Positions 25,101-60,800 of a DNA stretch of 64,000 nt are shown in pieces (position 1 is the first letter of the stretch; every line of letters begins with the position of its first letter). The translations under genes were made by a program, and so were the position numbers. The notes beneath the pieces were generated by a model. It saw nothing but the letters and a program-made list of their open reading frames with translations. It did no database searches and was not told the DNA's origin. Source of the DNA: Mytilus edulis (Eukaryota); contig NC_092353.1 in NCBI RefSeq assembly GCF_963676685.1, positions 17,918,001 to 17,982,000 of the forward strand. The letters run 5' to 3'.

Positions 25101-28100
25101 AATGGTCATGATGTTAAACTTGATGATTGATTGTTGATTATAATGGTCAATTAAGAGAGTCAGAAGCACCTGAAATTCGCAGGCTTTGAATTCACAAGCT
25201 TAGTGGGGACAGGCTAGTGATACAGTAGATATTCTGAGGCCCCTCTAAAACTTTAATATATTTTTTAAAATATAACACGGCCTAACATTAATCTTGACCT
25301 CGCTAAAACAGGAATTATTTGACACAAACTGTATGTTTTTGTATTTTATTATTTAGGTAGTTGATTATAGCACAATGCTGACAGAAGTACAGAATATAAA
25401 TACAGATTCTGGTATCAGTCAAGTATGGGTGGCATTTCAATGTAATTATGCTCTATATTCAGCTCTTAGTTCAAAGGTTGGTAGTCATTACAATATAAGT
25501 CTTGAAATATAATGGAATTTACAGAAAAGTAAAAGTTATCAGGCCCTGAAGAAAAGCCTTTATAAGGTATCATCCAAAAAACACATAATGCCAGCTAAAA
25601 AAGTTAAGTTTATTGCTCAAACCAAAGTAAGACTTTGATTCAGAACCAGATTTTCTGTTAAAAAAGGTTTAGGGGAATAAGTCTGTGGCAGTTATTGCTT
25701 TTAATGTCAGCAATTTTGAATATCTATACTATTAGATCAGAAGATTTAATTTTTGTTTGTTGCTTCTCATCCTACATCCCAATAAATTAATCATCATGCC
25801 TTTGAGTTCCAAAGGTACCATGCATAGTCACATTTCATAAAATTTGCCAGTCATAAAATCTTTTACAAAAATTCCTCCTACAACAGGTTACATATGTTCA
25901 ACCATTCTCTAAATGCTCACAATTTTGCAGATTATGTATGTGTATTTGAAATTTTTTTTTTTTAGAAAGTTCATCAAGCTAACACTCCAGCTGCCTTGAT
26001 AAAGACCAGAAAGAATGCAATAGAACAACAAGGCATGAGAAATTCACATGTAAGTTTTATTTCTTTCAAATGTTAGAAAGTTAAAACTGTTTATTCGTTT
26101 AATACTTTCAATTCTGAAATGTGTGCAATGTTTTATTATTATGATAATTGTGATGGGATAGGTTAAATTTTTGCAAATTTGCACATTAACATTCAAAATT
26201 AGCATTATTTGTTGGCAGTGATTTCTGAAGTTTGATAATTAATCTTTGCATTTTTGTACATTGATCAAATAGCACAATAATAAAAGCTTAAATTTTTGGG
26301 AATTTAAAGAACTTCTTCCTTGTCTGATTTATGAAGATATCATTTCAAATCAGAATTATTTATTTTGTCACTCATTTTAATAAAGAAAGATAGAAAAATC
26401 AAAGCAATTTTTATTAGAAATTTTCAAAATGTTGGCATGAATTATAATTTCTTCTGAAGTTAATTTTTGTGCTGCTTAGTTTTAAAATTTTGACATTTCT
26501 AGTACCAGATTTGGTAACAGCTGAACAAGAAGCAACAAGACATACAAATTTTGAATGAATGAAGATACTAATATATGCTGAGATCTGTCTGGGCATTGTC
26601 AGTTCTGCTTGTATTAATTGGAGATGGCAGCCAGCACATGTATTCTGTTTATTTCACATTTGCATCATTAGGAATGTTTGTTTAACAAAACAAACTGCCA
26701 TATTATTATTTTACTTTAAAAATATAGATATAATTCTTTATGATACTAAAATGGAAAAATACCAGATTCTATTTTAATGACAGCACAACCAAAGTATGTC
26801 AATTTTCAGATCTTTTTAGATTTATGACTTCTAGAATGACATTTGAACTTTTCAGAGATTTATATATTTTTAGAAAAGAGATGCAGTTGCACTGATTACC
26901 TTCATAGCCAATTTAGAGAAAACTGTAAGTACAAAAGACATGATTTTTGTGCATTCATTGCATTTGAGAGATAAATTTTTGCTTTTCAACCTGGGGTCAA
27001 AATAAGCAATGGTCCAGTGGTCGGAGACCAGTAGAATTTGCATCGGACCAGTAGATTTGGCAAGATGGTGATCTCGCCAACTTATAGAAATTTGTCAAGA
27101 AAAATCATTGATAGCATTGTGATCACACTTTTTTGTATCACACTTTACAAAAAAGTGTATCTACCAAAACAATTACATGGTACTGTGGGGTACCAAGTAT
27201 TATATTTTATCTTTTGTCATAAATGGGGGACAGTTAAGTGCAGCATAGCTATATATATAGGGATACAGAAGTGACGTAGGGTTTACCATTATTTCATTTA
27301 ATTATCTAACATTCATACACTAATATAAACTGTCTTTATGTAGGATCATTTCATAAACCTCGACCAGTGAAACATCTCTTTTTTGTATCTTTGATAGATG
27401 AAAGATGGTACAAAGGAATGGACAGAGGTATCAGCAGCATTAGACCTCAAAGAGCATAGATTGTAAGATATATTTGATATTCTAGATAGATCTGCTGCTG
27501 CAGGTTTAAGATATAGACTAAGATAACTCACATTTGAGGATGTTCCAGAAATTTGATTTTGGTAAATTTTTAAGTCTTCAGCTTTCATTTTTAAGTTGAC
27601 CATGGAGTTCAAATAGGTTTAAATGACAAATTATTGTATTAACTCAGATTTTGTTGTTGCCTGATACAGTTGTGGCTGTGGTTAACAAAAGGTCAAAGTT
27701 CTGGTTTAACTTGCAGATAAGTTAGTATGCATAATTATTATAAAGATATATACTGAATTACTGATCTGCAGTTCATTGAAAATGGAAATGTGAGTGCGAG
27801 CAGGGCATGGTGTCAACTATGGAAAAATATTCTTGCATATAAATAGCTATGGGAATTTCCTATAACTTTGAAAAAATCTTCACCTTGACCTTATATATAT
27901 TGTCACAGAATGTGACTGATAGAAGCCTGTTTCCTTTATGTTTTTTTTTTTTCATATTCACATGAACATATTGTATTGTGTAAATTCTAAAGAGGATTGA
28001 TAAAATGATGTATGATTATTTTTCAATTTAGATCTCAAGAAAAAAACCGAGGTTTGAGTTTTTCCAGTATTTCAGCTGTTGGTAGTAATGGAGCCATTAT

Positions 28101-31100
28101 TCATTACCACCCGTCTGCAGACACAGACAAAAAGTTATCTCTCAATGAAATGTATCTTCTAGATTCTGGTGGTCAATATTTGTAAGTTATTATTTTATTT
28201 CCAGCAATGCTGAACATAACAGAGGTTTAAGTTTTCCAAGTATATCTGGAAGTGGACCTAATGGGGCAGTTATACATTATTTTCCGACACCAGCTACTGA
28301 TAGGAAATTAAGTGTTGATGAAATGTATTTGTTAGATTCTGGTGGCCAGTATTTGTAAGTTAGCTTTGTTCTAATGCTGACTCTGACCACATATAATCTT
28401 TATCATTAAAAGGACAGCTTCTTTCTGTTTGCTACAATCTTAACTTTCATGCATTTTCAGACTCTGATTTATTGCTTTATTTTGTTCAGCTGAAATGACT
28501 TTTTCTTTCACTGCTGCACTCGGACTGCTTATATTTTCCTGTCATACATTTTTTTTTCATTCTTCAGATCTTAAACAATTGTTTCTTTTATTTCTAAAAA
28601 TTCATAATGATAAAAGTCTTGACAACTTATTGCAGAAAGATAGAATGCATTGTTTTTTTTGACAAAATTAATATATCATTGATGGCATATATTTTAAAAG
28701 TTTACATATTAATGCCTTTTCATAAGTTCCAATGATGGTAAAATGTTTTTAGTGGCTAAACAGGAAAGACGGGTTACATAAGAACAGTATTTTGAAATTT
28801 TCGAGTTAGTATTTAAGTATTGCATGTATATCCAAGATAAAAAGTAATATGAATGTACAGTAGCATGAACTTAGTTGTGAATGTAACAATTCTCAAATGG
28901 AGTTACTACCCTTTGTACCTTGAAATATTTTCTAATAAAAAACATAGATGACACAAGTATCCATTAGTTTCATATGAGAGGAATTAAACTTGACATGGTT
29001 GTATGGCACATATTTATTTTATTTCACATGTGAAAAAAATGATAGCGGCTATCCTTTATAACTTAGAAATGGCCTGTATAGAGGATTGAATAGAAGGGAT
29101 GTGTACTTATTCATGACACAAAATATTTCTCCCAAGTTAATTAAAGCTAAGAAACAGTATCTTAATTGCTGCTCTTCATTTTAATTCACAATATTTTCAA
29201 CAGAAAGTAAAAAATCACAAGTTTTAAGATGACCCTTAGCAACAGTAGGGCTAATTTCATTTGATACTCTCGAGTTAACTTTACTTATTCAGGTTTCAAC
29301 AAAATGATTTTACTTGAACCACTCAAGTTAACCCCTCGTACCCTGGTTCCAACCCTCAACGAGCCACGGTTAAACTCAAGAAACTCTTGAATGACATCAA
29401 ACCAATGAGAATATTTTATTTTTTATGCTTGGTCAGGGCCTTACCCTAGAGTTACTTAGAGTTGTTCCGAATATCAACTCTTGTGCGTTCACTTGATAAT
29501 CTATTAACTCTGAAGTCGATTGTAGAGTTTCAAGTGAACTCGACCTAGGAGAAAGTCTTTGTTAGATGTTGATAATATTACTTCTGTACATTGAAGACTG
29601 TCACAAAGGGGAATAGTTTGTAAATGTGCCTTACAATTTATGATTTCTCCACTCTGAACACATATAATCTTTATCATTAAAATAACAGTTTCTCTCTGTT
29701 CACCATAGACTTTACTTTCGTGCATTTTAAAACTTTGTGTTACAGCTTTATTTTGTTCAGCTGAAAGGTCTTATTTTTTATGACTACTTATATTTTTCTG
29801 GCATACATTTATGTTTCATTCTTCCAATCTTAATGTTTAATTTATTGCTTGATAATATTCTTGACATCTAATTGCAGAAAGATAGAATGCATTGTTTTTT
29901 TGACAAAATTAATATATCATTGGTTGCATACAAGTCCACATTTGGACATTTGAAAAGTTAACATATGATAAATGCCTTTTCATAAGTTTCTACGACAGTA
30001 AAATGATTTTGTGGCTAAACATGAAAGACAACTTCACAAGAAAAATATTTTGGAATTTCAGATAATATTCAAGTATTGCATGTATATCCAATAGAAAAAG
30101 TAAAATGAATATACAGTAGCATAAACTTAGTTGTGAATATATCATGTATGGCAGTTAATTGGTTTTTGTATGCTGTGTAATTCTCCATTAGAGTTATTGC
30201 CCTTTGTAGCTTGAAACATTTTCTAATAAAATAAATATAGATGACACAAGTACCCATTTGTTCCATATGAGAGAAATTTTAAAAACTTAACATGGTTGTA
30301 TGGTACCTATTTGTTCATATTTCATGTGTGGAAAAAAAATCATAGAACTATTCTTTATAACTTAAAAAATGGCATGCAAAGAGGATTGAATAGACAATGA
30401 TGGAAGGGATGTGTAATTATTTATGAAACAAAATCTTTCTCCCGAGCTATTTAATATTAGGAACAGTATTTATTGTAAGTGGCTATATATTGTTTTGAAA
30501 AAATGTAATGATTGAATAAAAGATTAGAATATTCCATTATTTTGTAGGGATGGAACAACTGATGTGACAAGAACATTCCATTTTGGTTCTCCTACAGCAT
30601 ACCAGAAAGTAAGACATTGTCACAAATATTACATCTTTAATATTACACATAGTACTAGTTCAAAACTTATTCATTTTGCTTGTGGTCTCCGAGGTGGCTA
30701 AGTCATCTTCTTTTTTTTATGCCCCATTTATAGGCATTATGTTTTCTGGTTTGTGCGTCCGTTTGTTAGTCCGTTTGTTGCTCCCACTCAGGTTAAAGTT
30801 TTTGGTCGAGGTAGTTTTTGATGAAGTTGAAGTCCAAACAACTTGAAACTTAGTACACATGTTCCTTATGATATGATCTTTCTAATTTTAATGCTAAATT
30901 AGAGGTTTTTCCACATTTTCACGGTTCATTGAACATAGAAAATGATAGTGGGGATGGGGCATCCGTGTACTAGGGACACATTCTTGTCATAAGTAGTTCT
31001 ATCACTACCCAGTTAACTTTGAGGTTATGAGTTTGTACCCCCAATTGTGCTGGTGCACTTAACTCCAATCTTTAATTAACTAGCATTGTCAGTTTTCTTA

Positions 31101-34100
31101 TTGAAAGTCATTGCTTTCTCCAAGCACTCTGGTTTCCTCTATCCATAACAACTGACAGCCTCAAAATAGGCCAAAAATGGCGCTTAAAAGTTGCGTTAAA
31201 ACACCAACAATCAATTTATATTCCTTTTGCTTATGTTTGTGTTATAATGTTTTTTCAGATCTGTTTGACACCTTCTTTATGTTTTGAAAATAAATTGAAT
31301 TATGAGTATATCTTGTAATTCCTCATATGTTTATTTATAGTGAATATAAAGATATGTTATGGTTTTAAATTAAAACATCTATATGTTGATGATAATATTC
31401 CTTGATCTTGAAATGATTGATTTTGTAGGAGTGTTACACAAGAGTTCTGATGGGACAAGTAGATTTAGCTCGCATTTTATTTCCTAACACATTATATGGT
31501 AAGTTAGGATGTGACTTCCATCACAAAATTGTCACAATGTGAAACTTAAAATAACAATGTGTCTCTATATTGGGTTTATTTTAACCTTTATGTGAACTAA
31601 GTATGATAATTACAGTAAGATTAAAAGATTTCAATTAAAATATGAATGCACTTCTTTGTTACTGCAGGAATGTTACACTCGTGTCCTCATGGGTCAGGTT
31701 GACTTGGCCAGATTTAAGTTTTACAAGGGGCCCCATGGTCCCTATGGTGAGTTATGCACCTTGTTTGTACATATAGAAAAGCATGTATTTAAAAGTTTCT
31801 TCTGTTAACACCCATATATCACAACCATAGATAATAATCATACTAATAAATAACAGAAAAGAGTAAAATGAAATACCACACGACAGAGTCGAGGGCTGGT
31901 TTAATAACAACCATTTAATAATATTTATCATATATATATAGAGAATAATACATGGCAAAATCCGTATCATATGTCGTATCATCCCGAGACATCAATATCA
32001 GCCCAAGGGCCTTTAGGCCCGAGGGATGATATTGGTCGAGGGCGATACGGCATGTGATACGGATTTTGCCATGTATTATACGCTTTATCATATATTTCAA
32101 CAGAAGAGTATTATATTATATGAACTGTTTTCTGATCCATAGCACTGGGTTACCTTCAGTTCTACTTTTGTCTTGTTTCATAGGCCTTAAAAGAACTGCT
32201 CAATTACTTATCCGAAGCACCTGGGTTACCTTACAATTTGCGTGCTGTTGTTTTAAAAATATTTTGTTTATTATTGTATTAATTTGTGTGTTTTGTATTT
32301 TTCATAGTTGCATTTAGTGTGCCAAAAAATATGATAACTTGACGTTCGTGACGTCACATACAATGTGAAAACTCGACGTTCGTGACGTCACATACCAAAC
32401 AATGACGTCATTCAAAAAATTAAAAAAAGTAGGGGTGTGATAAAGGGTAGGGGTGTGATAAAGGGTATGCGATAAAGGGTGCGCATCAAAGTTGCGCGAT
32501 ATGGATTAAAGAGCAGGCTATTTATCACATATGCAAAACTACTGTATTTACTACTAAACATATGATAAATTTCAATAAACACAACCATTAATAAATCAAT
32601 CAATCTCTTAATGCATGATACAAAATATCAAATAACATGGATACATAAATTAACATGGCATATCAAGTAGACCCTATTGTGCCAATTGATTAAACTGCAA
32701 AAATCACACAACAAACTTAACCTAAAATGCCATCCATGGGCATACAATTCAGAAGAAATAATTTCATTCTAATTCATAAAATCATCCGACTGAAATTATA
32801 TTTTTGATGAATTGAAATGTTGTCTTTTCATCACACCCATTGTCTTATTATGTTTTGGGGTCATTCATCAAAATGAAAGGATGTGTTGTTTTTTTGTTTT
32901 TTTTTTTTTTAAATTTGTTCAAATGAAGCCTTTGTATATAACTTATTCTTTTTTTTAAATTTTGCATGATATAACCTTAGATTGTGAGGGTAGAAGTAAA
33001 CATGTAAAATCTATTTAGAATGTACCATGCTTGAGTGAGTTAGTGTTTGCATGGTTTGATTTCATGTATAGTTTATTTATAATTTAATATAGATGTTAAA
33101 GTGATGTAACTAGTGTGGTATGTTATATACTACAATTCTCCAATATGTTATGCATCAGATTATACAGCTAGATGTCATTAAGGGAACAAACAAGGATATT
33201 ATAAGTTTTACATTTATAATAGTTTGTAACACAATTTAGAATAAGGCGTTGCTGCAAACATTTTGGAGTCTTGTAGTTTTCCCTTTTTCGCTCTGCATTT
33301 TTTTGTGAAAGCAAATACTTAGAAAGTAATTGTGCATATCATGCTTATTATATTATGGTGAGGTTCAGCTCTTTAATTTTGAAAAAAGTTTGTTTTTGTT
33401 AAGAATTACAAACTTTGAGAAATGTCTTTTGTAAATGTATAAAAACTCAAAATATATAGGTAAGAAGCTAATTTTAAAAGGTGGTACCAAACACATTCCC
33501 TTAAAAAAATTTGACTTATTTTAATTTTCATAAAATTTTGACAAATTTTTACTTTAACCATAAGACAAAAATATGAATATTTCAAAAAAATTGAACCCAC
33601 ACTATATCGGAAAAGTTTCATTGGACAAATAACAGTTTGACTAACACCAATTTTGATTGTTAAAAGCTTTCTATTTCCTGAACAATAGAACGTAATGAAT
33701 ATTTTCAGCTGATTTCTACAGAGTTATCTCCCTGTAGTGTTATGTACCACATTTGTTGTGCATATTATATATCTGTAAAATGCAGCTCATTAGTTTGGAT
33801 TTTATCTAAAAACAATGTTTAAACAAATTATTAGTGATTATAAACCAGTTAATATTCTCAATAATTCTATTAAATCCGGAAAATGAAAAATGTTGAAAAC
33901 AAGTAATGAATGGGAGATAACATTGGTTGTTGTGGTTTTACATACATTATCTCCCTTGTATATCATTTATTAATAATAACTAGAAAAAATATTCCAAGTA
34001 ACAATAACAAAATAACTTTTTATTTATTTAGAGCTATAAAATTGAGAATGGAAATGGGGAATGTGTTAAAGAGACAACAACCCGACCATAGAAAAAAACA

Positions 34101-37100
34101 ACAGCAGAAAGTCACCAATAGGTCTTCAATGTAGCGAGAAATTCCCGCACCCGGAGGTGTCCTTCAGCTGGCCCCTAAACAAATATATACTAGTTCAGTG
34201 ATAATGAACGCCATACTAATTTCCAAATTGTACACAAGAAACTTAAATTAAAATAATACAAGACTAACAAAGGCCAGAGGCTCCCGACTTGGGACAGGCG
34301 CAAAAATGCGGCGGGGTTAAACATGTTTGTGAGATCTCAAACCTCCCCCTATACCTCTAGCCAATGTAGAAAAGTAAACGCATAACAATACGCACATTGA
34401 AATTCAGTTCAAGAGAAGTTCGAGTCTGATGTCAGAAGATGTAACCAAAGAAAATAAACAAAATGACAATAATACATAAATAACAACAGTTAACTGACAT
34501 GCCACCTCCAGACTTCAATTACACTGACTGAAAGATTATGATTTCATCATATGAACATCAGGCACAATCCTTCCAATAGTTTATTTTTATAATCATAGTT
34601 TGTTGTTGCTAATGCAAAAACCAGCACATTTTAGTTAAGTTCATAATATGAAGATCAAATCATATATCAAAATCTCATGTATTTCATTTTAAAACAAAAA
34701 AAACATGTATTTGATATTGTATAAAAAATGTAATTAGCCTGTAATAGTTTGACTACACTGTCACCAAGAATACTGTACAGTACATAACACATGAATTCAA
34801 AACATTATTTCACTTTTACAGAGGAGAAACATAATCATACCTAATATTTGTTGTCAAAGAAAAATTTAATCAGTTCCCTTCCTTGACTTTGACCTGAAAA
34901 GTTTTTAAACTATGATACCTATATCTTGTTACTTTAACATTTGGTTGCGTTTTGTGGTTTAAGTTGAAAAAAGAGGCAGTATAATATTCACACTGTGTTC
35001 GTTGTTTTACACTGCCTTCTATAATGTGTTTAAGTTGACATTGAAAAAGTCAAATAAGAAAAAGGAAAGTCGCTAAACAAATGGCAAAATGAAAAAATTT
35101 AACACAGACGTCAAACGAATGGAATTGTTTCTGTAGGATCAATTTTGAGCTAGAATGCATTAAGGATAAATTATTAGCACACAACATTTTTAAATATCTG
35201 TGCATAGTACACTTCAATTACATAACATTCAAGTTTTAAAGCTTTATTATGTCGAGATTACTACTTCCATATTAATTATTTTTAGGACGTGAAATTGATG
35301 CAATAGCCAGAAGACCATTATGGGATGTAGGTTTAGAATACAGACATGGCACAGGACATGGTATAGGGTCATATCTCAGTGTACATGAAGGTAGGTTTAG
35401 AATACAGACATGGCACAGGACATGGTATAGGGTCATATCTCAGTGTACATGAAGGTAGGTTTAGAATACAGACATGGCACAGGACATGGTATAGGGTCAT
35501 ATCTCAGTGTACATGAAGGTAGAATATATATCTAACAAAAATGATCAAAAAATATTAAGTTTTAACCAGTTCCAGATTGTATGATGAAAATTGATTATCC
35601 ATATATAAATGAGATGAATAAGATGAATGGAAAAATAGATTGAAAAACAATAAAAAGATGAATTTAAAAAATATGCTTCTTTATGCAATGCTTGAGCATG
35701 CATTAAACATTAAGGAATTTAAGATAAGGTGGAGAAAAAGAACTGAGACTTTAAGAACTATTTTTTTTTCATTTGCCACTAAACACATAGAAAACTCTAT
35801 TTACTAGATTTCCAATGATAATGTTGTACCGGTATATTATTTTATTATTAAACAGGTCCAGGAAGAATTTCATTATCTCATGCCAGTTTTGATAGTGATG
35901 AGAAGCTGGATGAGTTCATGTTTTTCTCTGATGGTAAGTCCGAATGTCTTATATAGATATAGGAAAATGTGGTATGAGTGCCAATAAGACAACTCTCCAT
36001 GCAAGTCGTAATTTGTAAAAAGAATACCAATATAGGTGAAAGTATAGCCTTCAACAGAGAGCCTTCGAACACACCTAAACAGCAAGGTTTAAAGGGCTCC
36101 CAAAATGACTAGTGAAAAAAACAATGGTTTAATTTATATACAAAATGAGAAACACTTATGAACCACTTCAACTAACAGCTACCACTGAATAACAGTCTCC
36201 TGGCTTTGGACAGATGCATAAAAATGCAGCAAGTTTAAACGTTTTAACAGGCGCTAACCTTCACCATAACCTGAGATAGGAGTGTAACATTACAACATAA
36301 ATAAGTTTGTTTGAAAAATGTTTTACAATAATTTACACCATAAAAGACAAATTTGAGATAATAAGTTTAACATATACAAAAAAATGTATTCATTTTCAAT
36401 AAAATTGAGAATGGAAATGGGGCATGTGTCAAAGAGACGACAACCCGACCATAGAAAAAAACATATATAATTTTATAAAAACAATATTGGTAGGTTGGCA
36501 TATATATGCAACATGTTAGAAATTAATGTAATGTTGAAATATATACATTATTGTCGAGCCTGTAACTTTTGTTGCAGAAAGCTCGACATAGGGATAGTGA
36601 TCCAGCGGCAGCGGCGGCGGTGTTAGCTAACTTCTTAAAAGCTTTATATTTTAGAAGGTGGAAGACCTGGATGCTTCATACTTTGTACATAGATGCCTCA
36701 TGTTACGAAGTTTCTGTCAGTCACATGTCCAATGTCCTTGACCTCATTTTCATGGTTCAGTGACCACTTGAAAAAAAAAGTTCAAATTTTTTGTAATGTT
36801 GAATTCTCTCTTATTATAAGTAATAGGATAACTATATTTGATATGTGCGTACCTTGCAAGGTCCTCATGTCTGTCAGACAGTTTTCACTTGACCTCGACC
36901 TCATTTCATGGATCAGTGAACAAGGTTAAGTTTTGGTGGTCAAGTCCATATCTCAGATACTATAAGCAATAGGGCTAGTATATTCGGTGTATGGAAGGAC
37001 TGTAAGGTGTACATGTCCAACTGGCAGGTGTCATCTGACCTTGACCTCATTTTCATGGTTCAGTGGTTATAGTTAAATTTTTGTGTTTTGGTCTGTTTTT

Positions 37101-40100
37101 CTCATACTATATGCAATAGGTCTACTATATTTGTTGTATGGAATAATTGTAAGGTGTACATGTCTAGCGGGCAGATGTCATGTGACCTTGACCTCATTTT
37201 CATGGTTCAATGGTCAATGTTAAGTTTTTGAGTTTTGGTCTTTTTATTTAATACTATATGCTATAGGTCAACTATGTTTGGTGTATGGAAATATTTTATG
37301 ATCTTTATGTCAGTCGTGCAAGTTTTATTTGACCGTGACCTCATTTTCACGGTTCATTGCACTGTGTTAAGTTTTTGTGTTTTGGTCTATTTTTCTTGAA
37401 CTATAAGTAATAGATGAACCATGCCAGGCAGACATGTACAGCTAGCAATGCTTCTATATGTTGTATAGAAGCATTGCTAGCTGTACATGTCTGCCTGGCA
37501 TGGTTCATCTGACCTTGACCTCATTTTCAAGGTTCATTGGTCTTTGTTTAGTTATCTTGGTTAATGTTAAGTTTATTTGACAGTTGTTATAAAGCTTAAC
37601 TTTATACTTAGGACTATCAACATAATATCAATGATTAGTATAGAAGGCGAGACATTTCAGCGTGTGCACTCTTGTATTATTTATATTTAGAGCCTGGTTA
37701 TTATGAAGCTGGACAATTTGGTATCAGATTAGAAAATATTGTCATGGTAACAGAGGCAGAAACTACAGTAAGGTTATGTAATACATATATTTATTTGTCC
37801 ATAGAGGTGTTTTACTATGAAAATCATTTGTCAAAATAATATTTTGGAAGTTATATGAGGTAATCAAAAACCAGGTCTAGGGAGATTTTGTATGCTCAAC
37901 AATTAAACAATTAAAAAGATGCAGGCTTGGAAATCTCACAAAATATTTCTATAAAATAAATTCAAACTGCCTACAAGATATCAGACCTTTTTTTCATTTA
38001 CAGTAAAATCCTTGTGAGCTTATTTTCTGTTTGTCCATCCATAGGTTGAAACAACTGGTTTTAAGATGATACCTTTTGTTTGAAATATGTGAAGAAAAAG
38101 ATATCTTCATGACTTTCATTCAAAAACCATGAAATAACCAATGGAATTCTGTATATCACTGCTCTGGAGAAATCTTTTATAAAATATTACAGCTATATAT
38201 GGATTAAAATTTTATCATAATCTAAGTTACTAGATGAAATTTCTTATGATATCACGTTTTAAAAATTAGCCATTTTATTGAGCATGCATGTGTTGGGATG
38301 TTATCTGCACAAACATTTAGCTATATAGGATTAGACGTTATATTGCATTTATTTATTTGTTCAACAGATTTTTTTGGTTACATTTGAGTAAATTTAATAT
38401 TTTGATTGCAGGTTAACAGTGATGAAGTTTAATTTGAGCACTTTTAGAATCTGTCAGATATCTATATATTTGTCAAAACTAAGAGTTTTTGCTATGTTGA
38501 ATGAACTTAATATTGTTACCACATTTCTTAAATTCTACTTTTAAATACTGAGTGACTTGAAATCTAGACTGCAACTTGACAGTCAGATGACATATAAAGC
38601 ATTTGCACTTTTGGAATTCTTTAGACCTCATATTTTCTCATTTATTTACAGTGCTATACCAACACCCAACTCCTCTGAAAAAACAGACATGTAAAATAAA
38701 ACATGTTCCAGATTACCAGACTTTGTTCATGTACAAAATGTGGTTGGTTTAAATCAATTTAATGAGCACCCAAACATGTTTTTGTGCCATAGAAAAGCCC
38801 TATTTCAGGATAATTTAGATGAACAGTAATTTTATTATGCAACTTTATGTTTTCAGTACAACTTTATGAACAGTACCTTCCTGACATTTGAAACAGTAAC
38901 TCTGGTACCCTATGAACCAAACTTGATTGATTATGATTTGTTGAGTCCAGAACAGGTATGTATTTATGCCCCATTTATGGGCATTATGTTTTCTTGTCTG
39001 TGCGTTCCTCCATCGGTCGGTTCATTTGCTTTTCATCCGTCTGTCCTGCTTCAGGTTAAAGTTTTTGGTCGAGGTAGTTTTTTTTATGAAGTTGAAGTCC
39101 AATCAACTTAAAACTTAGTAAACATGTTCCCCATGATATGATCTTTCTAATTTTTATGCCAATTAGAGATTCTATCCCATTTTCACGGTCCACTGAACAC
39201 AGAAAATGACAGTGCTGATGGGGCATCCATGTACTTGGGACACATTCTTGTTTATGTTTGATGGGAACAGTGTTATCAATTTAAATCAAAGCTGATGATA
39301 CCAAATACAGAAAGCCACCCAACATGACTAAATATCTGAGTGCATGAACACTTATGTTAGGACACACCTTGCTCTGTATTTATGACCCATTTATGGGCAT
39401 TATGTTTTCTGGTCTTTGTGTCGTTCGTTCTTCCGTTTGTCTGTCACGCTTCACATTAAAGTTTTCGCTGCAGTATTAAGTTTTTGGTAGAGGTAATTTT
39501 CGATGAAGTTGAAGTCCAATCATCTTGAAACTTAGGAAACATGTTCCCTATAATACGATCTTTCTAATTTTAATGCCAAATTAGAGGTTTTTTTTCCATT
39601 TTCATGGTTCACTGAATAAAGAAAATGATAGTGCGGATGGGGCATCCATACACTTGGGACACATTCTTGTAAGGAGGGGAATTAGTAACAAGGAGAAAGA
39701 TTCCAACCAAAATGTCATTTATTAAAAGCAATCAAATTTATTTACAACAGGGGAGATAATCTTACAAAGGGTAACATTTATATGCCCCTGATTTAACCCC
39801 TCTGATAAAAAGCCACCCTACAAAAAATATGGCATACAAAAAGCAAAAGCAAAAGACATGTTTTACTTAAAGCTAATTATGAGGCCATGCCGTCCTAACA
39901 TATCTGTTATCTGATTGGTAGGTTAAATATACAGATTAAACAATTATGCAATATACTTTTAGTTTAAATTGACTTTGCAATTCAAATAGTTGTCTACATA
40001 GACCTGAATAATTTTTTTAGGAAAGAATGCAATGCAATTTTAAATTTTGTTTTGACCTCAATATGTTTTAAGTAGAATGTAGATTAATATATTCATGATA

Positions 40101-48800: not shown

Positions 48801-51800
48801 GTTTAATTCCAATGGTGTCAACTTACAAGGGGTAATAATTCCATCAGAAGATGCACACCAGGTATGTTTTTTAGGAATAAATTATACAGTGTACATTGTG
48901 TAAAATTATAGCATTTCAAAATTTGACCATAAAAATACAAATTTATTATTAACTTTTAAAAAAAAACTGAATTTGATATTGTCCCAGAGATGATCGTGAG
49001 CTATTTGAAAGGATATTTATATAGAGAATTTGAAGAAAATAACAGCATCATTTAAGTCTTGTTTCAAGCTTTGATTAAGACAATTAATTTAAAGGAAAAA
49101 AATATAGAAGGTAAAATATCTTCATACAACACTATAAATGTATAAAAATAACTATAGCCAATCTTATATATTTGAAGGACAGATAGTTAGTGGTCAGTTG
49201 TAATGACAGTAGTACTGTTAAATAAGAACATTTATTATTCTAATCAAATCCATTGATGGGCAACATGACATGTACACATACAACAATACATCATGATTTG
49301 TAACAGAAAAAAACCCATTTTTTTATAAAATTGAAATGATATAATATAATATTAAAAGTTCAGACAGATGTTATTATCTTCATTGTATATAAGTCACATA
49401 CATTTAATTCCAGGCAGGACCTGAGAACTGTACAATCATTATGATTATCATTGTTATGACATATATTAATTGACATTCTGTCTAACATCTAGACACGTAA
49501 TTATAAAGTTTCCTATATATTTACACATTATATAAACACATTACTTTGGTAAATAACCAAATAATTTTGCCTCATTTGGAAAATATGAAAAATTAAAACA
49601 AATACTGTATCTCCTTGAAACAGTTCTTTGAATGCTGAACAACTAGTAGTAAAATGTTGTTCATCTTCAACTAGATTTTCTTACAAATAAACTCATCATA
49701 GATACCAGGATGAAATTTTCTTATTTATGCCAGACGCGCATTTTGTCTACAAAAGACTCATCAGTGACGCTCGAATCAAAAAATGTTTAAAAGGCCAAAT
49801 AAAGTACGAAGTTGAAGAGCATTGAGGACCAAAAATTCCTAAACGTTTTGCCAAACACAGCTACGGTAATCTATTCCTGAGGTAGAAAAGCCTTAGTTTT
49901 TCAAAAATTCAAAGTTTTGTTAACAGTTAATTTATGATTATGAACATATCAATGATAACTCAAGTCAACACAGAAGTGCTGACTACTGGGCTGGTGATAC
50001 CCTCTGGGAAGCCTTTGGTCTCTTTCTATATGTAAAGTTTAAAATACCTGTTATCATTATTCTGATCGAAGCAGTTACTTTTTGCACACATACCTATATA
50101 TTGATGAATACTATGTTGATTAATTGATTTTGTTATGTTTGTTTTTTGTGTTGTGGGTCACTGATTTATTAATGTGAGTCCTTCTTCTTTTATCAATACC
50201 ATAAGTAACCATACAAGATGCCAAATTACATCCCTTGCACTTGAATTTTTGTTGGGAAAAGTAAGGCTTGTTTTAATTTTATGTATATTGTGTTTTACAC
50301 ATATAAAATTGAGAATGGAAATAGGGAATGTGTCAAAGAGACAACAACCCGACCAAATAAAAAACAAAAAACAACAGCAGAGGGTCACCAACAGGTCTTC
50401 AATGTAGCGAGAAATTCCCGCACCCGGAGGCGTCCTTCAGCTGGCCCCTAAACAAATATATACTAGTCCAGTGATAATGAACGCCATACTAATTTCCAAA
50501 TTGTACACAAGAAACTAAAATTAAAATAATACAAGACTAACAAAGTATGTCTAGAATTAAGTACAAAGGGCTCATGAACAAATTAATTTTACATGTTATC
50601 ATCCTGAGGTGCATGCAATTTTTGGCAAATGAAATAACACATCCATATATCAATATATTACAATTTTAGAGTGAGTTCCCAGCAGAGTATGATAAAAGAA
50701 GAGCCTATATCTCTGGATACGATGGATCACATGGTAAGTATACAATATATTACGATTTTAGAGTGAGTTCCCAGCAGAGTATGATAAAAGAAGAACCTAT
50801 ATCTCAGGATTCGAAGGATCACATGGTAAGTATACAATATATTACAATTTTAGAGTGAGTTCCCATCAGATTATGATAAAAGAAGAGGCTATATCTCAGG
50901 ATTCGATGGATCACATGGTAAGTATACAATATATTACAATTTTAGAGTGAGTTCCCAGCAGAGTATCAGATGAAAGAAGAGCCTATATCTCAGGATTCAA
51001 TGGATCTCATGGTTTGTATCAGATTATTGTTCTGATTGTTGTAGTGTAAATTAATAAGAATGAAATCTTATGTTTGCCTGTCTAATATCAGGGATATAAA
51101 TTTACAAATCGGAAATGATTAATACCCTCAGTAACTAGTCTGAGGACACAGTTATTGCCCTTTGGGTTTTTGTTGTTTACAAATATAGTTCCAAGTGTGA
51201 TCGGTGTATAACTTGTAATTTTTTTCACATACTTTCCCAATTTATTTTTTGATATTTTATGCATGAAATATTAGGTATAGGGATGAAGTTACATGTTTGG
51301 GTGCTGAATATTAATGTTAAGAAGGGATTTGGCCTAATTGAAAAAGGTAAAAACATAGATTGTCTGAAGCTGTCAAACTGAATTTAAGAGCCAGTGCATA
51401 GACTTTTGTTGTCTACCCTTTGATCAGGTTGTTGTCTCTTTCACATATTCCCAATTTCCATTCTTAATTTTATATGCTATAATTTTGATAATATTTGTTC
51501 AGATAGTAGTACACTACACTGTAAAAATCTTTTTGAGAGCATAAGAAAAAGGTAAATTTTATTCCCTACTATCATAGGCTGATGACCTGGCACCATGAAG
51601 ATGATAATAATTCATATAATGTATCCTTTTGATAGGTTTAGCTATAGTATTGAAGGACAAAGCTGCACTATGGACTGATGGTAGATACTATACCCAGGCT
51701 GAGAACCAGTTAGACTGTAACTGGATACTTATGAAACAAGGTTAGAATGCCTTCAAATTTATTTTTAGTTGTTTTGAGTAGTTGATTACATAAATAGTGG

Positions 51801-57800: not shown

Positions 57801-60800
57801 TTGTTTTAATTTCAACATTTGCATTTATACTATCGTCATAACCCAAAAGATAGACATGCATTATTTCTGTGCATGCATTTAAAGATCCTGCAGAAAATAA
57901 AATCTTTACCTAAATATTTGGCAAAAGTGACTACCTCTTGTTTGGTCTTTTGAATTTTTTATTTTTATTCTCATTTTGTATGCAGATGTTATAGATTCCC
58001 AAAATCCTCCACCTCTTTAGGTAAGAATCAGTAAATGTAAATAAAACCCTTCTTCCATAATGGATAAACCTCTTATGGGTCATTTTTTTGAGGGCTCATA
58101 CATAATTGGTTGAATGTTTATGATTGTTTTAGGTGAAAAGTGGTCAGTTTCCTGTTGCAACTGAGCTATCTGCAGCCAACCAACTGGACTCATTCAGAGG
58201 GTGAGTTAATAGTCTTTGTCATTTAATCTACTTTTCATCCTTGTTTATCGTGACTGCGACTTTGCGACAATACATCTCTCGCTGCTTGTAAACATTTGAA
58301 AGAGATATTGTTTTCTTTTTGAATTTATATTTTTGTCAGTGAAGTAGCCGGCACTTGAAGCCACCGTAAATGGCGGATTTCTGCCAGCTAGCAGCTTCAA
58401 TGGAAAGCCCTGGTGTTGTTGTCCATGTAGCATTGTTTGTGAAAAGTATATCCTCTGTTTTGTCCTTTATATATGAAGAAGTCTAAAATTTCCATTCTCA
58501 ATTTTAAAGTCTAAAATCCATATTTCAGAAGAGAGATCTACAACAGAGGTACCAGTTTCCCAACCCTGTCAGCTTACGGAACTAATGCTGCTATCATCCA
58601 TTACATGCCAAGTTTGTCTACAAATGTAGAGATCAAAACAGATAACATGTATCTTCTGGATTCTGGAGGACAGTATCTGTAAGTACAAAATAATTAAAAA
58701 ATCTACTGTGATGAAATTTAAACATCCATTTTATTTAAACTTGTTTAGTAGTTGTTTTGAATTTAAATTCTTGTATTAATGCAAGTCATTGTTTTGTCCC
58801 GGAAGCTCTTTACAACAGAAAAATAGTATAAAGATAAATTCCTGGATTCAGAATGAATACTACCTTACTTTAGCAGAGATAATGGAGTTTTTATTGTTAT
58901 TTTTTCCTCAGGGATGGAACCACTGATGTGACACGTACATTTCATTATGGAGTACCAACGAATCGTCAGAAGGTACATAATTTTGATAATCATTTTTCAA
59001 ACAATCATATTGAGTGTATTGTTGGTCATTTTTTGGAGAATTTGTATAAGTTTAAGATTAGAAATGCTGTGAGAAGCATATACAATAAATAAAGTTCTCA
59101 ATATGAAGAACGACACTAGAATTGTTGTTTCTTTGAAAATAAAAAAAAAAGAATGGTTCCTATATTTTATGCTGTTTCTGTGTTATTTATACTTCATCAA
59201 ATGATTTCTTTAAATTAAAGGTTTTATTTGTGTCATAAAAGTACATATCATATGACATCATTTGAACTACTGTACATACTAAAAATTGAAAATTTATTTT
59301 GGACAGGAATGTTACACTAGAGTTCTGATGGGACATATCGACCTGGCTAGATTTATTTTCTATAAAGGAGCATATGGACCCTATGGTAGAGAAATAGATG
59401 CTATAGCCAGGAGACCACTGTGGGAAGTTGGACTAGACTATAGGCATGGGACTGGTCATGGGGTAGGGGCATATCTAAGTGTGCATGAAGGTATTTATTG
59501 GTTGAAATATATTTTTATGCCCCACCTACAATAGTAGAGTGGCATTATGTTTTCTGGTCTGTGGGTTCCATTCCTTCGTCCGTCCATTCGTCCTGCTTCA
59601 GGTTAAAGTTTTTGGTCAAGGTAGTTTTTGATGAAGTTGAAGTCCAATCCACTGGAAACTTAGTACACATGTTCCCTATGATATGATCTTTCTAATTTTA
59701 ATGCCAAATAAGAGTTTTTACCCCAATTTCACGGTTGACTGAACATAGAAAATGATAGTGCAAAAGGGGCATCCATGTATTTGGGACACATTCTTGTTAA
59801 TGGGATGTTTTTATGTTTGATACTTAAATTCTTTGGGTAAACAGACGTTAAGCATCCAACAATCAATCAATCAATCTTTGGGTAGACCAAATAAATAGTA
59901 AATATTTACTCTTGAAAATCTAAGAAGACAAAACATTTTCTATATCAAGACAATTTTTGTATTGCATTGCATCACATGAAAAGCTGTAAAAAAAGTAAAA
60001 AAAGTCTCAAATCAATGAGTATAAGGAAATTCATTGAAAATAGACCAATACATTTTTAGCTCACCTGGCCCAAAGGGCCAAGTGAGCTTTTCTCATCACT
60101 TGGCGTCCGTCGTCCGTCGTCCTTCGTCCGTCGTCGTCGTCGTCCGCCGTTAGCTTTTACAAAAATCTTCTCCTCTGAAACTACTGGGCCAATTTTTACT
60201 AAACTTGGCCACAATCATTATTAGGGTATCTAGTTTAAAAATTGTGTCCGGTGACCCGGCCAACCAACCAAGATGGCCGCCATGGCTAAAAATAGAACAT
60301 AGGGTGTAAAATGCAGTTTTTGGCTTATAACTCAAAAACCAAAGCATTTAGAGCAAATCTGACATGGGGTAATATTGTTCATCAGGTCAAGATCTATCTG
60401 CCCTGAAATTTTCAGATGAATCGGACATTCCGTTGTTGGGTTACTGCCCCTGAAATGGTAATTTTAAGGAAATTTTGCTGTTTTTGGTTATTATCTTGAA
60501 TATTATCATAGATAGAGGTAAACTGTAAACAGCCAAAATGTTCAGTAAAGTAAGATCTACAAATAAGTAGTCAACAGGACCAAAATGGTCTGTTGACCCC
60601 CTTTAGGAGTTATTGCCCTTTATAGTCAATTTTTAACAATTTTTCGTAAATCTTGGTCATCTTTTACAAAAATCTTCTCCTCTGAAACTACTGGGCCAAA
60701 TTAAACCAAACTTGACCACAATCATCATTGGGGTATCTAGTTAAAAAAATGTGTCCGGTGAACTGGCCAGCCAACCAAGATGGCCGCCATGGCTAAAAAT

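What the first reader, a model, noticed from the sequence alone, without database searches (positions are those of the whole stretch)
31429..31746. Second mutually exclusive exon pair in the catalytic domain, enforced by reading frame
Seen: 17a (70 nt, ...[13 protein letters not shown]) and 17b (79 nt, ...[16 protein letters not shown]). The first 15 residues are identical, yet most codons differ at synonymous sites, which indicates long purifying selection on both. Including both (149 nt) or neither shifts the frame. Inference: with 15a/15b this gives up to four catalytic-domain isoforms. 17b replaces the usual FP motif with a loop three residues longer, ahead of the HGTGHG metal motif.
Basis: partly seen in the sequence, partly recalled or inferred. 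Interest (0 to 1): 0.78.

Follow-up and report, generated by a model that had tools for sequence, protein, structure and literature searches.

The report
Alternative exon pair in mussel aminopeptidase P
A mussel aminopeptidase P gene carries two old, intact copies of one small exon that are swapped by splicing to change a surface turn of the enzyme; this is an ordinary kind of alternative splicing, is already in RefSeq, and is shared with oysters.

Summary
Exon 17a (31429-31498, 70 nt) and exon 17b (31668-31746, 79 nt) lie in a Mytilus Xaa-Pro aminopeptidase gene, both with AG/GT splice sites. Their first 15 codons give the same peptide despite 14 nucleotide differences (0 of 200,000 random trials).

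Using both exons, or neither, gives an early stop.

RefSeq already lists all four 15a/15b x 17a/17b isoforms (X1-X4) for M. galloprovincialis and M. trossulus. The scan had already followed up the sister pair 15a/15b in this window.

In the four RNA data sets I laid on the window, only 17a was spliced in; 17b had zero depth. In Mytilus, 17b is therefore a minor or conditional form.

- 17b-type transcripts exist in another mytilid and are common in oyster assemblies.
- Oyster RefSeq isoforms X1/X2 differ only by the same 17b-type/17a-type swap, so the pair predates the mussel-oyster split.
- Scallops have three exon-17 variants.
- The neighbouring paralogue (gene 2) and an oyster paralogue each keep only the 17b type. 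A tree suggests these arose independently.

Exon 17 encodes a helix end and a turn, not inhibitor-contacting residues.

Verdict: real, conserved, ordinary; modest interest.

The parts
30548..30608 (+). Exon 16 of gene 1 ([20 protein letters not shown]); ends in phase 0
   Evidence: Sequence read. Pfam Peptidase_M24 hit at E 0.029. Splice joint 30608>31429 present in 4 of 4 runs.
31429..31498 (+). Exon 17a, 70 nt, ancestral-length variant (…[12 protein letters not shown]); the form seen in RNA here
   Evidence: Joints 30608>31429 and 31498>35286 were seen in all four runs: X21 3 and 4 reads, X24 10 and 8 reads, X1 one contig at depth 74.5, X14 one contig at depth 15.5. Present in RefSeq X3/X4.
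31499..31667 (+). 169-nt intron between the two alternative exons
   Evidence: Outside the exons there is no detectable similarity between the flanks of 17a and 17b.
31668..31746 (+). Exon 17b, 79 nt, variant with a turn 3 residues longer (…[15 protein letters not shown])
   Evidence: Depth 0 in the 31618-31791 bin in 4 of 4 runs. The exact peptide is in RefSeq X1/X2 of M. galloprovincialis and M. trossulus. A 17b-type is present in a Logan transcript of another mytilid and in oysters.
35286..35390 (+). Exon 18 (G)[34 protein letters not shown](G), with the HGTGHG motif
   Evidence: Pfam Peptidase_M24 hit at E 1.9e-6. Joint from 17a.
35327..35522 (+). Exact 64-nt x 3.1 tandem repeat that copies the 3' end of exon 18 together with its donor site. 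Only the first donor keeps the frame.
   Evidence: The match of the X14 transcript contig ends at 35392 (table 8). It was not tested whether this is an assembly artefact.
58912..58972 (+). Exon 16 of the tandem paralogue (gene 2)
59307..59490 (+). Gene 2: a single 17b-type exon 17 fused to exon 18 with no intron ([31 protein letters not shown]…VHE)
   Evidence: It differs from gene 1's 17b at 20 of 78 nt and 5 of 26 residues.
28033..28355 (+). Exons 15a and 15b, the other alternative pair of gene 1. This is the subject of an earlier scan finding and is context only.
   Evidence: Two tblastn matches of P0004, at 28033-28182 and 28212-28355. RefSeq isoforms. Scan note s1-838847.

Best explanation
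Exons 17a and 17b are a mutually exclusive pair made by an ancient tandem duplication of exon 17 in a membrane-type Xaa-Pro aminopeptidase (aminopeptidase P, M24B) gene of a Mytilus mussel. A transcript takes one of the two. Taking both or neither shifts the frame into an early stop, so such transcripts would give no enzyme and are probably removed by nonsense-mediated decay (inferred).

The two exons encode the same helix end ([15 protein letters not shown]). After it comes either the ancestral-length turn (ILFPNTLYG) or a turn three residues longer ([12 protein letters not shown]), followed by the helix that leads to the HGTGHG metal and substrate motif.

In Mytilus, 17a is the main form and 17b a minor or conditional one. 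In oysters the 17b type is common in transcript assemblies.

The pair predates the mussel-oyster split. In each lineage a later gene duplicate kept only the 17b type.

The functional effect is probably on a surface property such as folding, stability, oligomer contacts or partner contacts, not on the catalytic residues. This last point is inferred and weak.
For: Anatomy and frame.

Selection:
- 14 nt differences and 0 residue differences in 15 codons, with 0 of 200,000 random trials matching this.
- 17b against gene 2's exon 17: 20 nt differences but only 5 residue differences, again 0 of 200,000.

Gene identity:
- Creatinase_N_2, Peptidase_M24 and Peptidase_M24_C hits on exon pieces.
- AlphaFold models of both isoforms have mean pLDDT 92-93.
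- The 17b-isoform model (the one searched) matches 3ctz at TM 0.89 and 4s2r at TM 0.94.

Use of 17a: splice joints in 4 of 4 runs.

Both forms annotated: M. galloprovincialis and M. trossulus X1-X4 are 717, 717, 714 and 714 aa and form the four combinations.

17b-type in spliced RNA:
- Logan transcript proteins P0283 and P0193, from 2.5-2.7 kb contigs, 73% identical to Mytilus gene 1.
- 12 of 12 listed members of the oyster Logan cluster that cover exon 17.

Conservation:
- In C. virginica, O. edulis and S. echinata, X1 and X2 differ only in the exon-17 block, by 3 aa (plus one substitution 8 columns upstream in S. echinata).
- Scallops have three exon-17 variants.

Paralogues:
- Gene 2 has a single 17b-type exon.
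- In the tree built with exon-17 columns removed, oyster 17b-only paralogues sit next to oyster gene 1 (support 100/99) and Mytilus gene 2 next to mussel gene 1 (92/94).
- One clade holding all 17b-only paralogues is rejected, p-AU 1.3e-5.

Location in the protein:
- The models give helix 505-523, a short strand, a turn, then the next helix in both isoforms.
- No apstatin contact of C. elegans APP-1 lies in the exon-17 equivalent (with the offset taken).
Against: - No read or contig touched 17b in any of the four RNA data sets: depth 0, against 3-10 junction reads or contig depth 15-75 for 17a. That table lists only 15 of 139 joints. The tool also warns that conserved stretches can be filtered, so a dip in depth is not proof of absence.
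- I could not see what evidence lies behind the RefSeq 17b models.
- Exclusivity was not shown directly.
The statement that the oyster variants are neighbouring exons of one gene rests on RefSeq isoform naming and on otherwise identical protein sequences.
- The independence of the two 17b-only paralogues could be an artefact of gene conversion between tandem copies. The AU group was also named after I had seen the quick tree.
- The link to nonsense-mediated decay and the functional effect are inferences.
Confidence: 0.8

Rival explanations
1. 17b is a silent relic in this species: an intact-looking duplicated exon that is no longer spliced in. On this view the RefSeq 17b isoforms are model-building products.
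For: Depth was zero over 17b, and no 17b joint was listed, in 4 of 4 RNA data sets from three coded organisms and four studies. Only 1 of the 21 members of the Mytilus protein cluster carries no name, so at most one could come from a source other than named database entries.
Against: The frame is open and the acceptor and donor sites are good. No residue has changed in 15 codons despite near-saturated synonymous change. The 17b peptide is identical in three Mytilus species' models. It matches a 73%-identical mytilid transcript at 25 of 27 residues, and oysters at 23 of 27, where the whole proteins are only 61% identical (residue counts made by eye). A relic would have decayed over that time span.
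Confidence: 0.1
2. 17b was copied recently into gene 1's intron from the neighbouring 17b-type paralogue (gene 2) by gene conversion or unequal exchange. On this view its intactness says nothing about selection in gene 1.
For: Gene 2 lies about 28 kb downstream and carries the only other 17b-type exon in this genome.
Against: 17b differs from gene 2's exon at 20 of 78 nt, with synonymous sites near saturation. Oyster gene 1 orthologues have the same 17b-type alternative. A 73%-identical mytilid transcript that groups with gene 1 carries it.
Confidence: 0.03
3. The two exons are ordinary cassette exons without real mutual exclusion, and double or null forms are common and functional.
For: The intron between them is 169 nt, long enough to be spliced, so nothing steric forbids double inclusion. 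No convincing competing RNA pairing was found.
Against: Double inclusion gives a stop after 10 codons and skipping gives a stop after 6 codons. No joint 31498>31668 or 30608>35286 is among the 15 listed joints (124 were not shown). All RefSeq isoforms seen contain exactly one of the two.
Confidence: 0.05

Closest known systems
RefSeq isoforms X1-X4 of 'xaa-Pro aminopeptidase 1-like' in Mytilus galloprovincialis (XP_076078058/59/61/62) and M. trossulus (XP_063404104/05/07/08)
   Same: These are the same gene and the same two exon-17 peptides, combined with the two exon-15 peptides. The window's peptides are identical to them in exons 16-18.
   Different: They are automatic models without a published description.
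Oyster orthologues: C. virginica X1/X2 (XP_022293537/XP_022293539), Ostrea edulis X1/X2 (XP_048766479/80), Saccostrea echinata X1/X2 (XP_061176382/83)
   Same: The isoform pairs differ only in the exon-17 block. One form has the 27-residue 17b-type (…LARFKFAKT..GPYG) and the other a 24-residue form.
   Different: No exon-15 pair was seen in these oyster isoforms. The 17b-type seems to be the common form in oyster transcript assemblies, whereas 17a is the form seen in Mytilus reads. The genomic arrangement was not seen.
Mutually exclusive exons from tandem exon duplication, and their fate after gene duplication (PGM1/PGM5 pattern; PMC9741552, passages read)
   Same: Homologous neighbouring exons, one per transcript, old and under selection. 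After gene duplication, one copy keeps both exons and the other keeps one, as here with gene 1 and gene 2.
   Different: Here the loss of the same exon (17a) appears to have happened twice, once in mussels and once in oysters. The gene family is not among those named in the passages I read. The supplementary tables were not seen.
Human XPNPEP1 (PDB 3ctz) and C. elegans APP-1 (4s2r)
   Same: Same three-domain fold. The exon-17 region aligns to 3ctz residues 442-465 and carries the usual FP.G..G turn, as in 17a.
   Different: Both lack the 3-residue insertion of the 17b type. No alternative exon at this place is known to me for them (recalled, not searched beyond).

Membership tests
Mutually exclusive exon pair from tandem exon duplication | Neighbouring exons that are homologous, of similar length and in the same phase | tested here: met
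   70 and 79 nt, both entering in phase 0 and leaving 1 nt over. 15 of 15 leading residues are identical.
Mutually exclusive exon pair from tandem exon duplication | Each exon is found spliced into mature RNA | tested here: inconclusive
   17a: joints in 4 of 4 runs. 17b: depth 0 in those 4 runs. It is present in RefSeq X1/X2 models of Mytilus and in spliced Logan transcripts of another mytilid and of oysters.
Mutually exclusive exon pair from tandem exon duplication | Transcripts carry exactly one of the two | tested here: inconclusive
   No both-exon or neither-exon joint is among the 15 listed of 139. Both alternatives give early stops. All isoforms seen hold exactly one. There was no depth on 17b with which to test it directly.
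Mutually exclusive exon pair from tandem exon duplication | Both copies kept by selection and conserved in relatives | tested here: met
   Permutation tests. The pair is present in Mytilus species and oysters, and scallops have three variants.
Xaa-Pro aminopeptidase, M24B, three-domain XPNPEP1/2 type | Creatinase_N / Creatinase_N_2 / Peptidase_M24 / Peptidase_M24_C architecture and pita-bread fold | tested here: met
   Exon pieces hit PF16189, PF00557 and PF16188. Orthologous proteins carry all four families. Model against 3ctz gives TM 0.89.
Xaa-Pro aminopeptidase, M24B, three-domain XPNPEP1/2 type | Five metal ligands (Asp, Asp, His, Glu, Glu) conserved | tested here: met
   D482, D493, H559, E596 and E610 of P0189 are invariant in 67 sequences. 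Their assignment as ligands follows C. elegans Asp413, Asp424, His487, Glu522 and Glu536 and my own alignment by eye.
Membrane-bound (APP2-like) subtype | N-terminal signal peptide and C-terminal hydrophobic or GPI signal | not tested
   The models show terminal helices 2-17 and 692-716, which is only suggestive. No signal or GPI predictor was run.

The most novel reading that the evidence does not exclude
Exon 17 of bivalve membrane-type aminopeptidase P is an ancient isoform switch that predates the split of mussels and oysters. It has two versions in mussels and oysters and three in scallops. Its longer 17b-type turn gives the enzyme a distinct, selectable property. That property mattered enough for the 17b form to be hard-wired twice independently into single-isoform paralogues, once in mussels (gene 2 of this window, with the 17b/18 intron lost) and once in oysters.
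Probability: 0.45. Interest if true: 0.5.

Novelty: new member of a known kind. Interest (0 to 1): 0.3.

Why it matters
On its own this is one more tandem-duplicated, mutually exclusive exon pair, and its isoforms are already in RefSeq. What gives it some value is the wider pattern seen here.
- The same small exon of one peptidase is kept as an alternative set across mussels, oysters and scallops.
- The 17b-type is better conserved between mussels and oysters (23 of 27 residues) than the whole protein (61%).
- Gene duplicates that keep only the 17b type seem to have arisen twice.

This makes a clean natural test case for how splice isoforms are converted into separate genes. It also points to a turn outside the active site that must matter for aminopeptidase P. 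No paper describing it turned up in four full-text searches (only listings, titles and abstract starts were seen).

Tried and rejected
- Competing RNA structures. An inverted-repeat scan of 30609-32400 gave only short AT-rich pairs, for example 13 nt at 31538-31550 against 31713-31725 inside 17b, plus a 45-nt hairpin at 31936-32088 that looks like a small mobile element. With one genome there is no way to test conservation, so I make no claim.
- Steric exclusion. Rejected, because the intron between the exons is 169 nt.
- Similarity of the flanks of 17a, 17b and gene 2's exon: none outside the exons, so the limits of the duplication cannot be traced.
- Other paralogues in the same genome (L003, L004, L006; L007 matched only the exon-18 part, query 27-53). 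Where the exon is seen, exon 17 is 24 residues long, so they are not sources of 17b.
- Search of 1.84 billion representative proteins with gene 2's fused exon. Of the 150 best hits, only two short fragments (P0001, P0003) carry the 17b-type turn. Isoforms are hidden inside 50% clusters, so this search underestimates the spread. The 90% collection was more useful.
- Structural location. The tools give no coordinates, so distances from the turn to the metal site or to a subunit interface could not be measured. The human XPNPEP1 structure paper was not held. My memory that a tryptophan in the following helix lies in the human dimer interface is recalled only, and I do not use it as evidence.
- Coupling of the exon 15 and exon 17 choices. 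Not testable: the two pairs are more than 3 kb apart in the gene, the stretch from exon 15 to exon 18 exceeds the 6,000-letter limit, and 17b had no reads.
- Supplementary tables of PMC9741552 and related papers were not opened. They list human and fly genes and are unlikely to bear on bivalves.
Full report
WHAT IS THERE

Its peptides match RefSeq proteins of Mytilus. At one diagnostic residue of exon 15b (…EHNRG) it matches the M. edulis form and not the M. galloprovincialis or M. trossulus form.

On the + strand lies a Xaa-Pro aminopeptidase gene, gene 1. Single-exon translations hit Creatinase_N_2, Peptidase_M24 and Peptidase_M24_C. A Mya arenaria orthologue (P0004) maps exon by exon from about 15.4 kb to 39.0 kb.

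The finding's coordinates are exact.
- Exon 16 ends at 30608 on a full codon.
- Exon 17a is 31429-31498 (70 nt).
- Exon 17b is 31668-31746 (79 nt).
- Exon 18 begins at 35286.
- Both alternatives have AG acceptors and GTAAGT or GTGAGT donors.

MORE THAN CHANCE

The first 15 codons of 17a and 17b encode the same peptide but differ at 14 of 45 nucleotides, in 12 codons. When 14 random substitutions were placed in that stretch, the peptide was kept in 0 of 200,000 trials.

The only other 17b-type exon in the 1.37-Gb genome is in the tandem paralogue, gene 2, at 59307-59490. It differs from 17b at 20 of 78 nucleotides but at only 5 of 26 residues, again 0 of 200,000. So 17b is not a recent copy of gene 2's exon, and it has been kept as coding sequence for a long time.

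The flanking introns of 17a, 17b and gene 2's exon share no detectable similarity.

FRAME

I read 17b in the frame that 17a leaves, and a stop follows after 10 codons. I read exon 18 directly after exon 16, and a stop follows after 6 codons.

That such transcripts are removed by nonsense-mediated decay is an inference. The 169-nt intron between the exons is long enough to splice, so there is no steric block. A scan for competing RNA pairings found nothing convincing.

RNA

One search for runs and one laying of reads were allowed. I laid these four data sets on 30400-35600:
- two raw RNA-seq runs of coded organism B (X21, X24, from two studies);
- two contig sets labelled 'RNA?' of organisms A and C (X1, X14).

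The joints 30608>31429 and 31498>35286 appear in 4 of 4 sets.
- X21: 3 and 4 reads.
- X24: 10 and 8 reads.
- X1: one contig, depth 74.5.
- X14: one contig, depth 15.5.

The bin holding 17b (31618-31791) has depth 0 in all four, and no joint to 31668 is among the 15 listed. A further 124 joints were not shown. The tool also warns that conserved stretches may be filtered.

So 17a is the form in use in these samples, and 17b was not seen. This is the main result against the reading that both exons are in regular use in Mytilus.

PUBLIC PROTEINS

Because spliced models of the window may not be searched, I started from gene 2's single fused exon 17/18.

Of the 150 best of 3,574 representative proteins, nearly all have the short turn. 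Only two gene-2-like fragments carry the long one.

Using the Mya protein returned there as query for the exon 16-19 region, I examined 119 proteins. The motif was found in 117 of them, and 13 of those have the long, 17b-type spacing. A fourteenth, P0224, was seen. All fourteen are from Mytilus, from oysters, or from unnamed Logan transcript assemblies. A second search with the Mytilus 17b isoform added no further taxa.

Cluster listings and sequence extraction show the following.
- M. galloprovincialis X1-X4 and M. trossulus X1-X4 are 717, 717, 714 and 714 aa. They are exactly 15b+17b, 15a+17b, 15b+17a and 15a+17a.
- M. edulis X3 and X4, both with 17a, were listed. 6 of the 21 cluster members were not listed.
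- C. virginica, Ostrea edulis and Saccostrea echinata X1/X2 differ by 3 aa, and only in the exon-17 block (S. echinata also has one substitution 8 columns upstream): …LARFKFAKT..GPYG against …LAMM.F.AG.YG.
- Argopecten, Pecten and Mizuhopecten X1-X3 are of equal length. They differ only in exon 17, with three 24-residue variants, one of them 17a-like (…WPTNLYG).
- Mya arenaria isoforms vary in the exon-15 and exon-19 regions.

Spliced use of the 17b type is shown in two ways.
- Logan proteins of 656 and 719 aa, from 2.5-2.7 kb contigs, are 73% identical to Mytilus gene 1.
- In one oyster Logan cluster of 43 members, 40 were read and 15 listed. 12 of the 12 listed members that cover exon 17 are 17b-type.

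By eye:
- the Mytilus 17b peptide matches the other mytilid at 25 of 27 residues and oysters at 23 of 27;
- 17a matches the oyster short form at 17 of 24;
- the whole proteins are 61% identical.

Outgroups (heterodont bivalves, Solemya, gastropods, Lingula) all have the 24-residue form …(K)WP.G.YG. So 17a is the ancestral-like form and 17b the derived one.

PARALOGUES

Gene 2 of the window has single versions of exons 15 and 17, and no intron between its 17b-type exon and exon 18. This confirms scan note s1-839102.

Oysters also have a paralogue with only a 17b-type exon (P0334, P0215, P0216, P0223, P0224).

I built a careful maximum-likelihood tree of 32 proteins with the exon-17 columns removed.
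- Oyster 17b-only paralogues are sister to oyster gene 1 (support 100/99).
- Mytilus gene 2 is sister to mussel gene 1 (92/94, not starred).
- Holding all 17b-only paralogues in one clade costs 61 log-likelihood units (p-AU 1.3e-5).

Two cautions apply. I named that group after seeing a quick tree. Gene conversion between tandem copies could also mimic lineage-specific duplication.

Rows left out of the careful tree, relative to the quick one, were the long-branched shark, Asterias, Antedon, cytosolic Mytilus and Aplysia rows, plus Pomacea and three heterodont 'b' paralogues.

The pattern, one duplicate keeping both exons and the other keeping one, is a described outcome for tandem-duplicated exons (PMC9741552, passages).

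WHERE IT SITS IN THE ENZYME

Exon 17 aligns to human XPNPEP1 (3ctz) residues 442-465. The long form has a 3-residue insertion relative to 3ctz and 4s2r.

AlphaFold models of the RefSeq 17b isoform (P0189) and the 17a isoform (P0272) were built with 67-row alignments. They are confident, with mean pLDDT 92.3 and 92.9.
- Both show helix 505-523.
- A short strand or bridge follows at 526-528.
- Then comes a turn.
- Then comes the next helix: 535-547 in the 17b isoform, 533-544 in the 17a isoform.
- The 17b model matches 3ctz and 4s2r.

[quoted passage not shown] None lies in the exon-17 equivalent, which is 440-463 in that paper's numbering. I derived the offset of 23.

So the switch changes a turn outside the active site. 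An effect on surface, stability or oligomer contacts is my inference. The same paper notes that membrane-bound APP2 enzymes differ in oligomer state between species (section 3.2). No coordinates were available to measure distances.

COMPARISON AND NOVELTY

The feature works like, and meets most tests of, a mutually exclusive exon pair from tandem exon duplication. The isoforms are already public as RefSeq models. The scan had already followed up the sister pair 15a/15b in this window (s1-838847).

I found no paper on alternative exons of aminopeptidase P in molluscs. The searches were made, and only listings and abstract starts were seen.

- the selection test;
- the read evidence that 17a is the form in use in the sampled Mytilus RNA;
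- the conservation of the pair in oysters and of an exon-17 set in scallops;
- the apparently repeated fixation of the 17b type in duplicate genes.

VERDICT

A real, old, selected alternative exon pair. It is ordinary in kind, already annotated, and of modest interest (0.3). 17b is a minor or conditional form in Mytilus.

Noticed in passing
window 35327-35522: An exact (100%) 64-nt x 3.1 tandem repeat copies the last 64 nt of exon 18 together with its donor site, giving three identical donors. Only the first (35390|35391) keeps the frame, and reading on gives a stop. A transcript contig's match ends at 35392. It is either a very recent duplication or an assembly artefact.
   Followed up: partly
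window 30748-31095 and 33706-34575: Intronic stretches have very high RNA depth (hundreds to thousands of reads), many mismatches, loose ends and 'goes back' joints (for example 30950>30788). They look like copies of abundant repeats or mobile elements transcribed elsewhere, not part of the gene's mRNA.
   Followed up: no
window 31936-32088: A 45-nt inverted repeat (89% complementary, 63 nt apart) lies about 200 nt downstream of 17b. It is probably a small hairpin-forming mobile element.
   Followed up: no
window 31538-31550 and 31713-31725: A 13-nt stretch in the 17a-17b intron is 92% complementary to a stretch inside exon 17b. It is short and AT-rich, may be chance, and conservation was not testable.
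   Followed up: no
window 50670-50919 (gene 2): The Mya protein's residues 89-110 match three neighbouring places in gene 2 (50670-50735, within 50762-50908, and 50854-50919).
   Followed up: no
proteins P0194, P0191 (M. trossulus X6, X7): These two RefSeq isoforms skip exon 15 altogether and are 50 aa shorter. They lose the LLDSGGQY stretch that holds one of the invariant aspartates, so they would probably be inactive.
   Followed up: no
proteins (scallops, Mya, Mercenaria): Other bivalves vary the same gene at different places. Scallops have three exon-17 variants. Mya has alternative exon-15 and exon-19 regions. Mercenaria has five alternative N-terminal (signal-peptide) exons. Tandem exon duplication seems recurrent in this gene family.
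   Followed up: partly
window 36890-37413: A 147-nt tandem repeat (about 3.6 copies, 77-80% matches) lies in the intron after exon 19.
   Followed up: no
window 31461 and 35356: Fixed differences are seen in relatives' RNA: A>T at 31461 in organism B reads, and A>G at 35356 in the organism C contig. Both fall on third codon positions of exons 17a and 18 and are synonymous by my reading.
   Followed up: no
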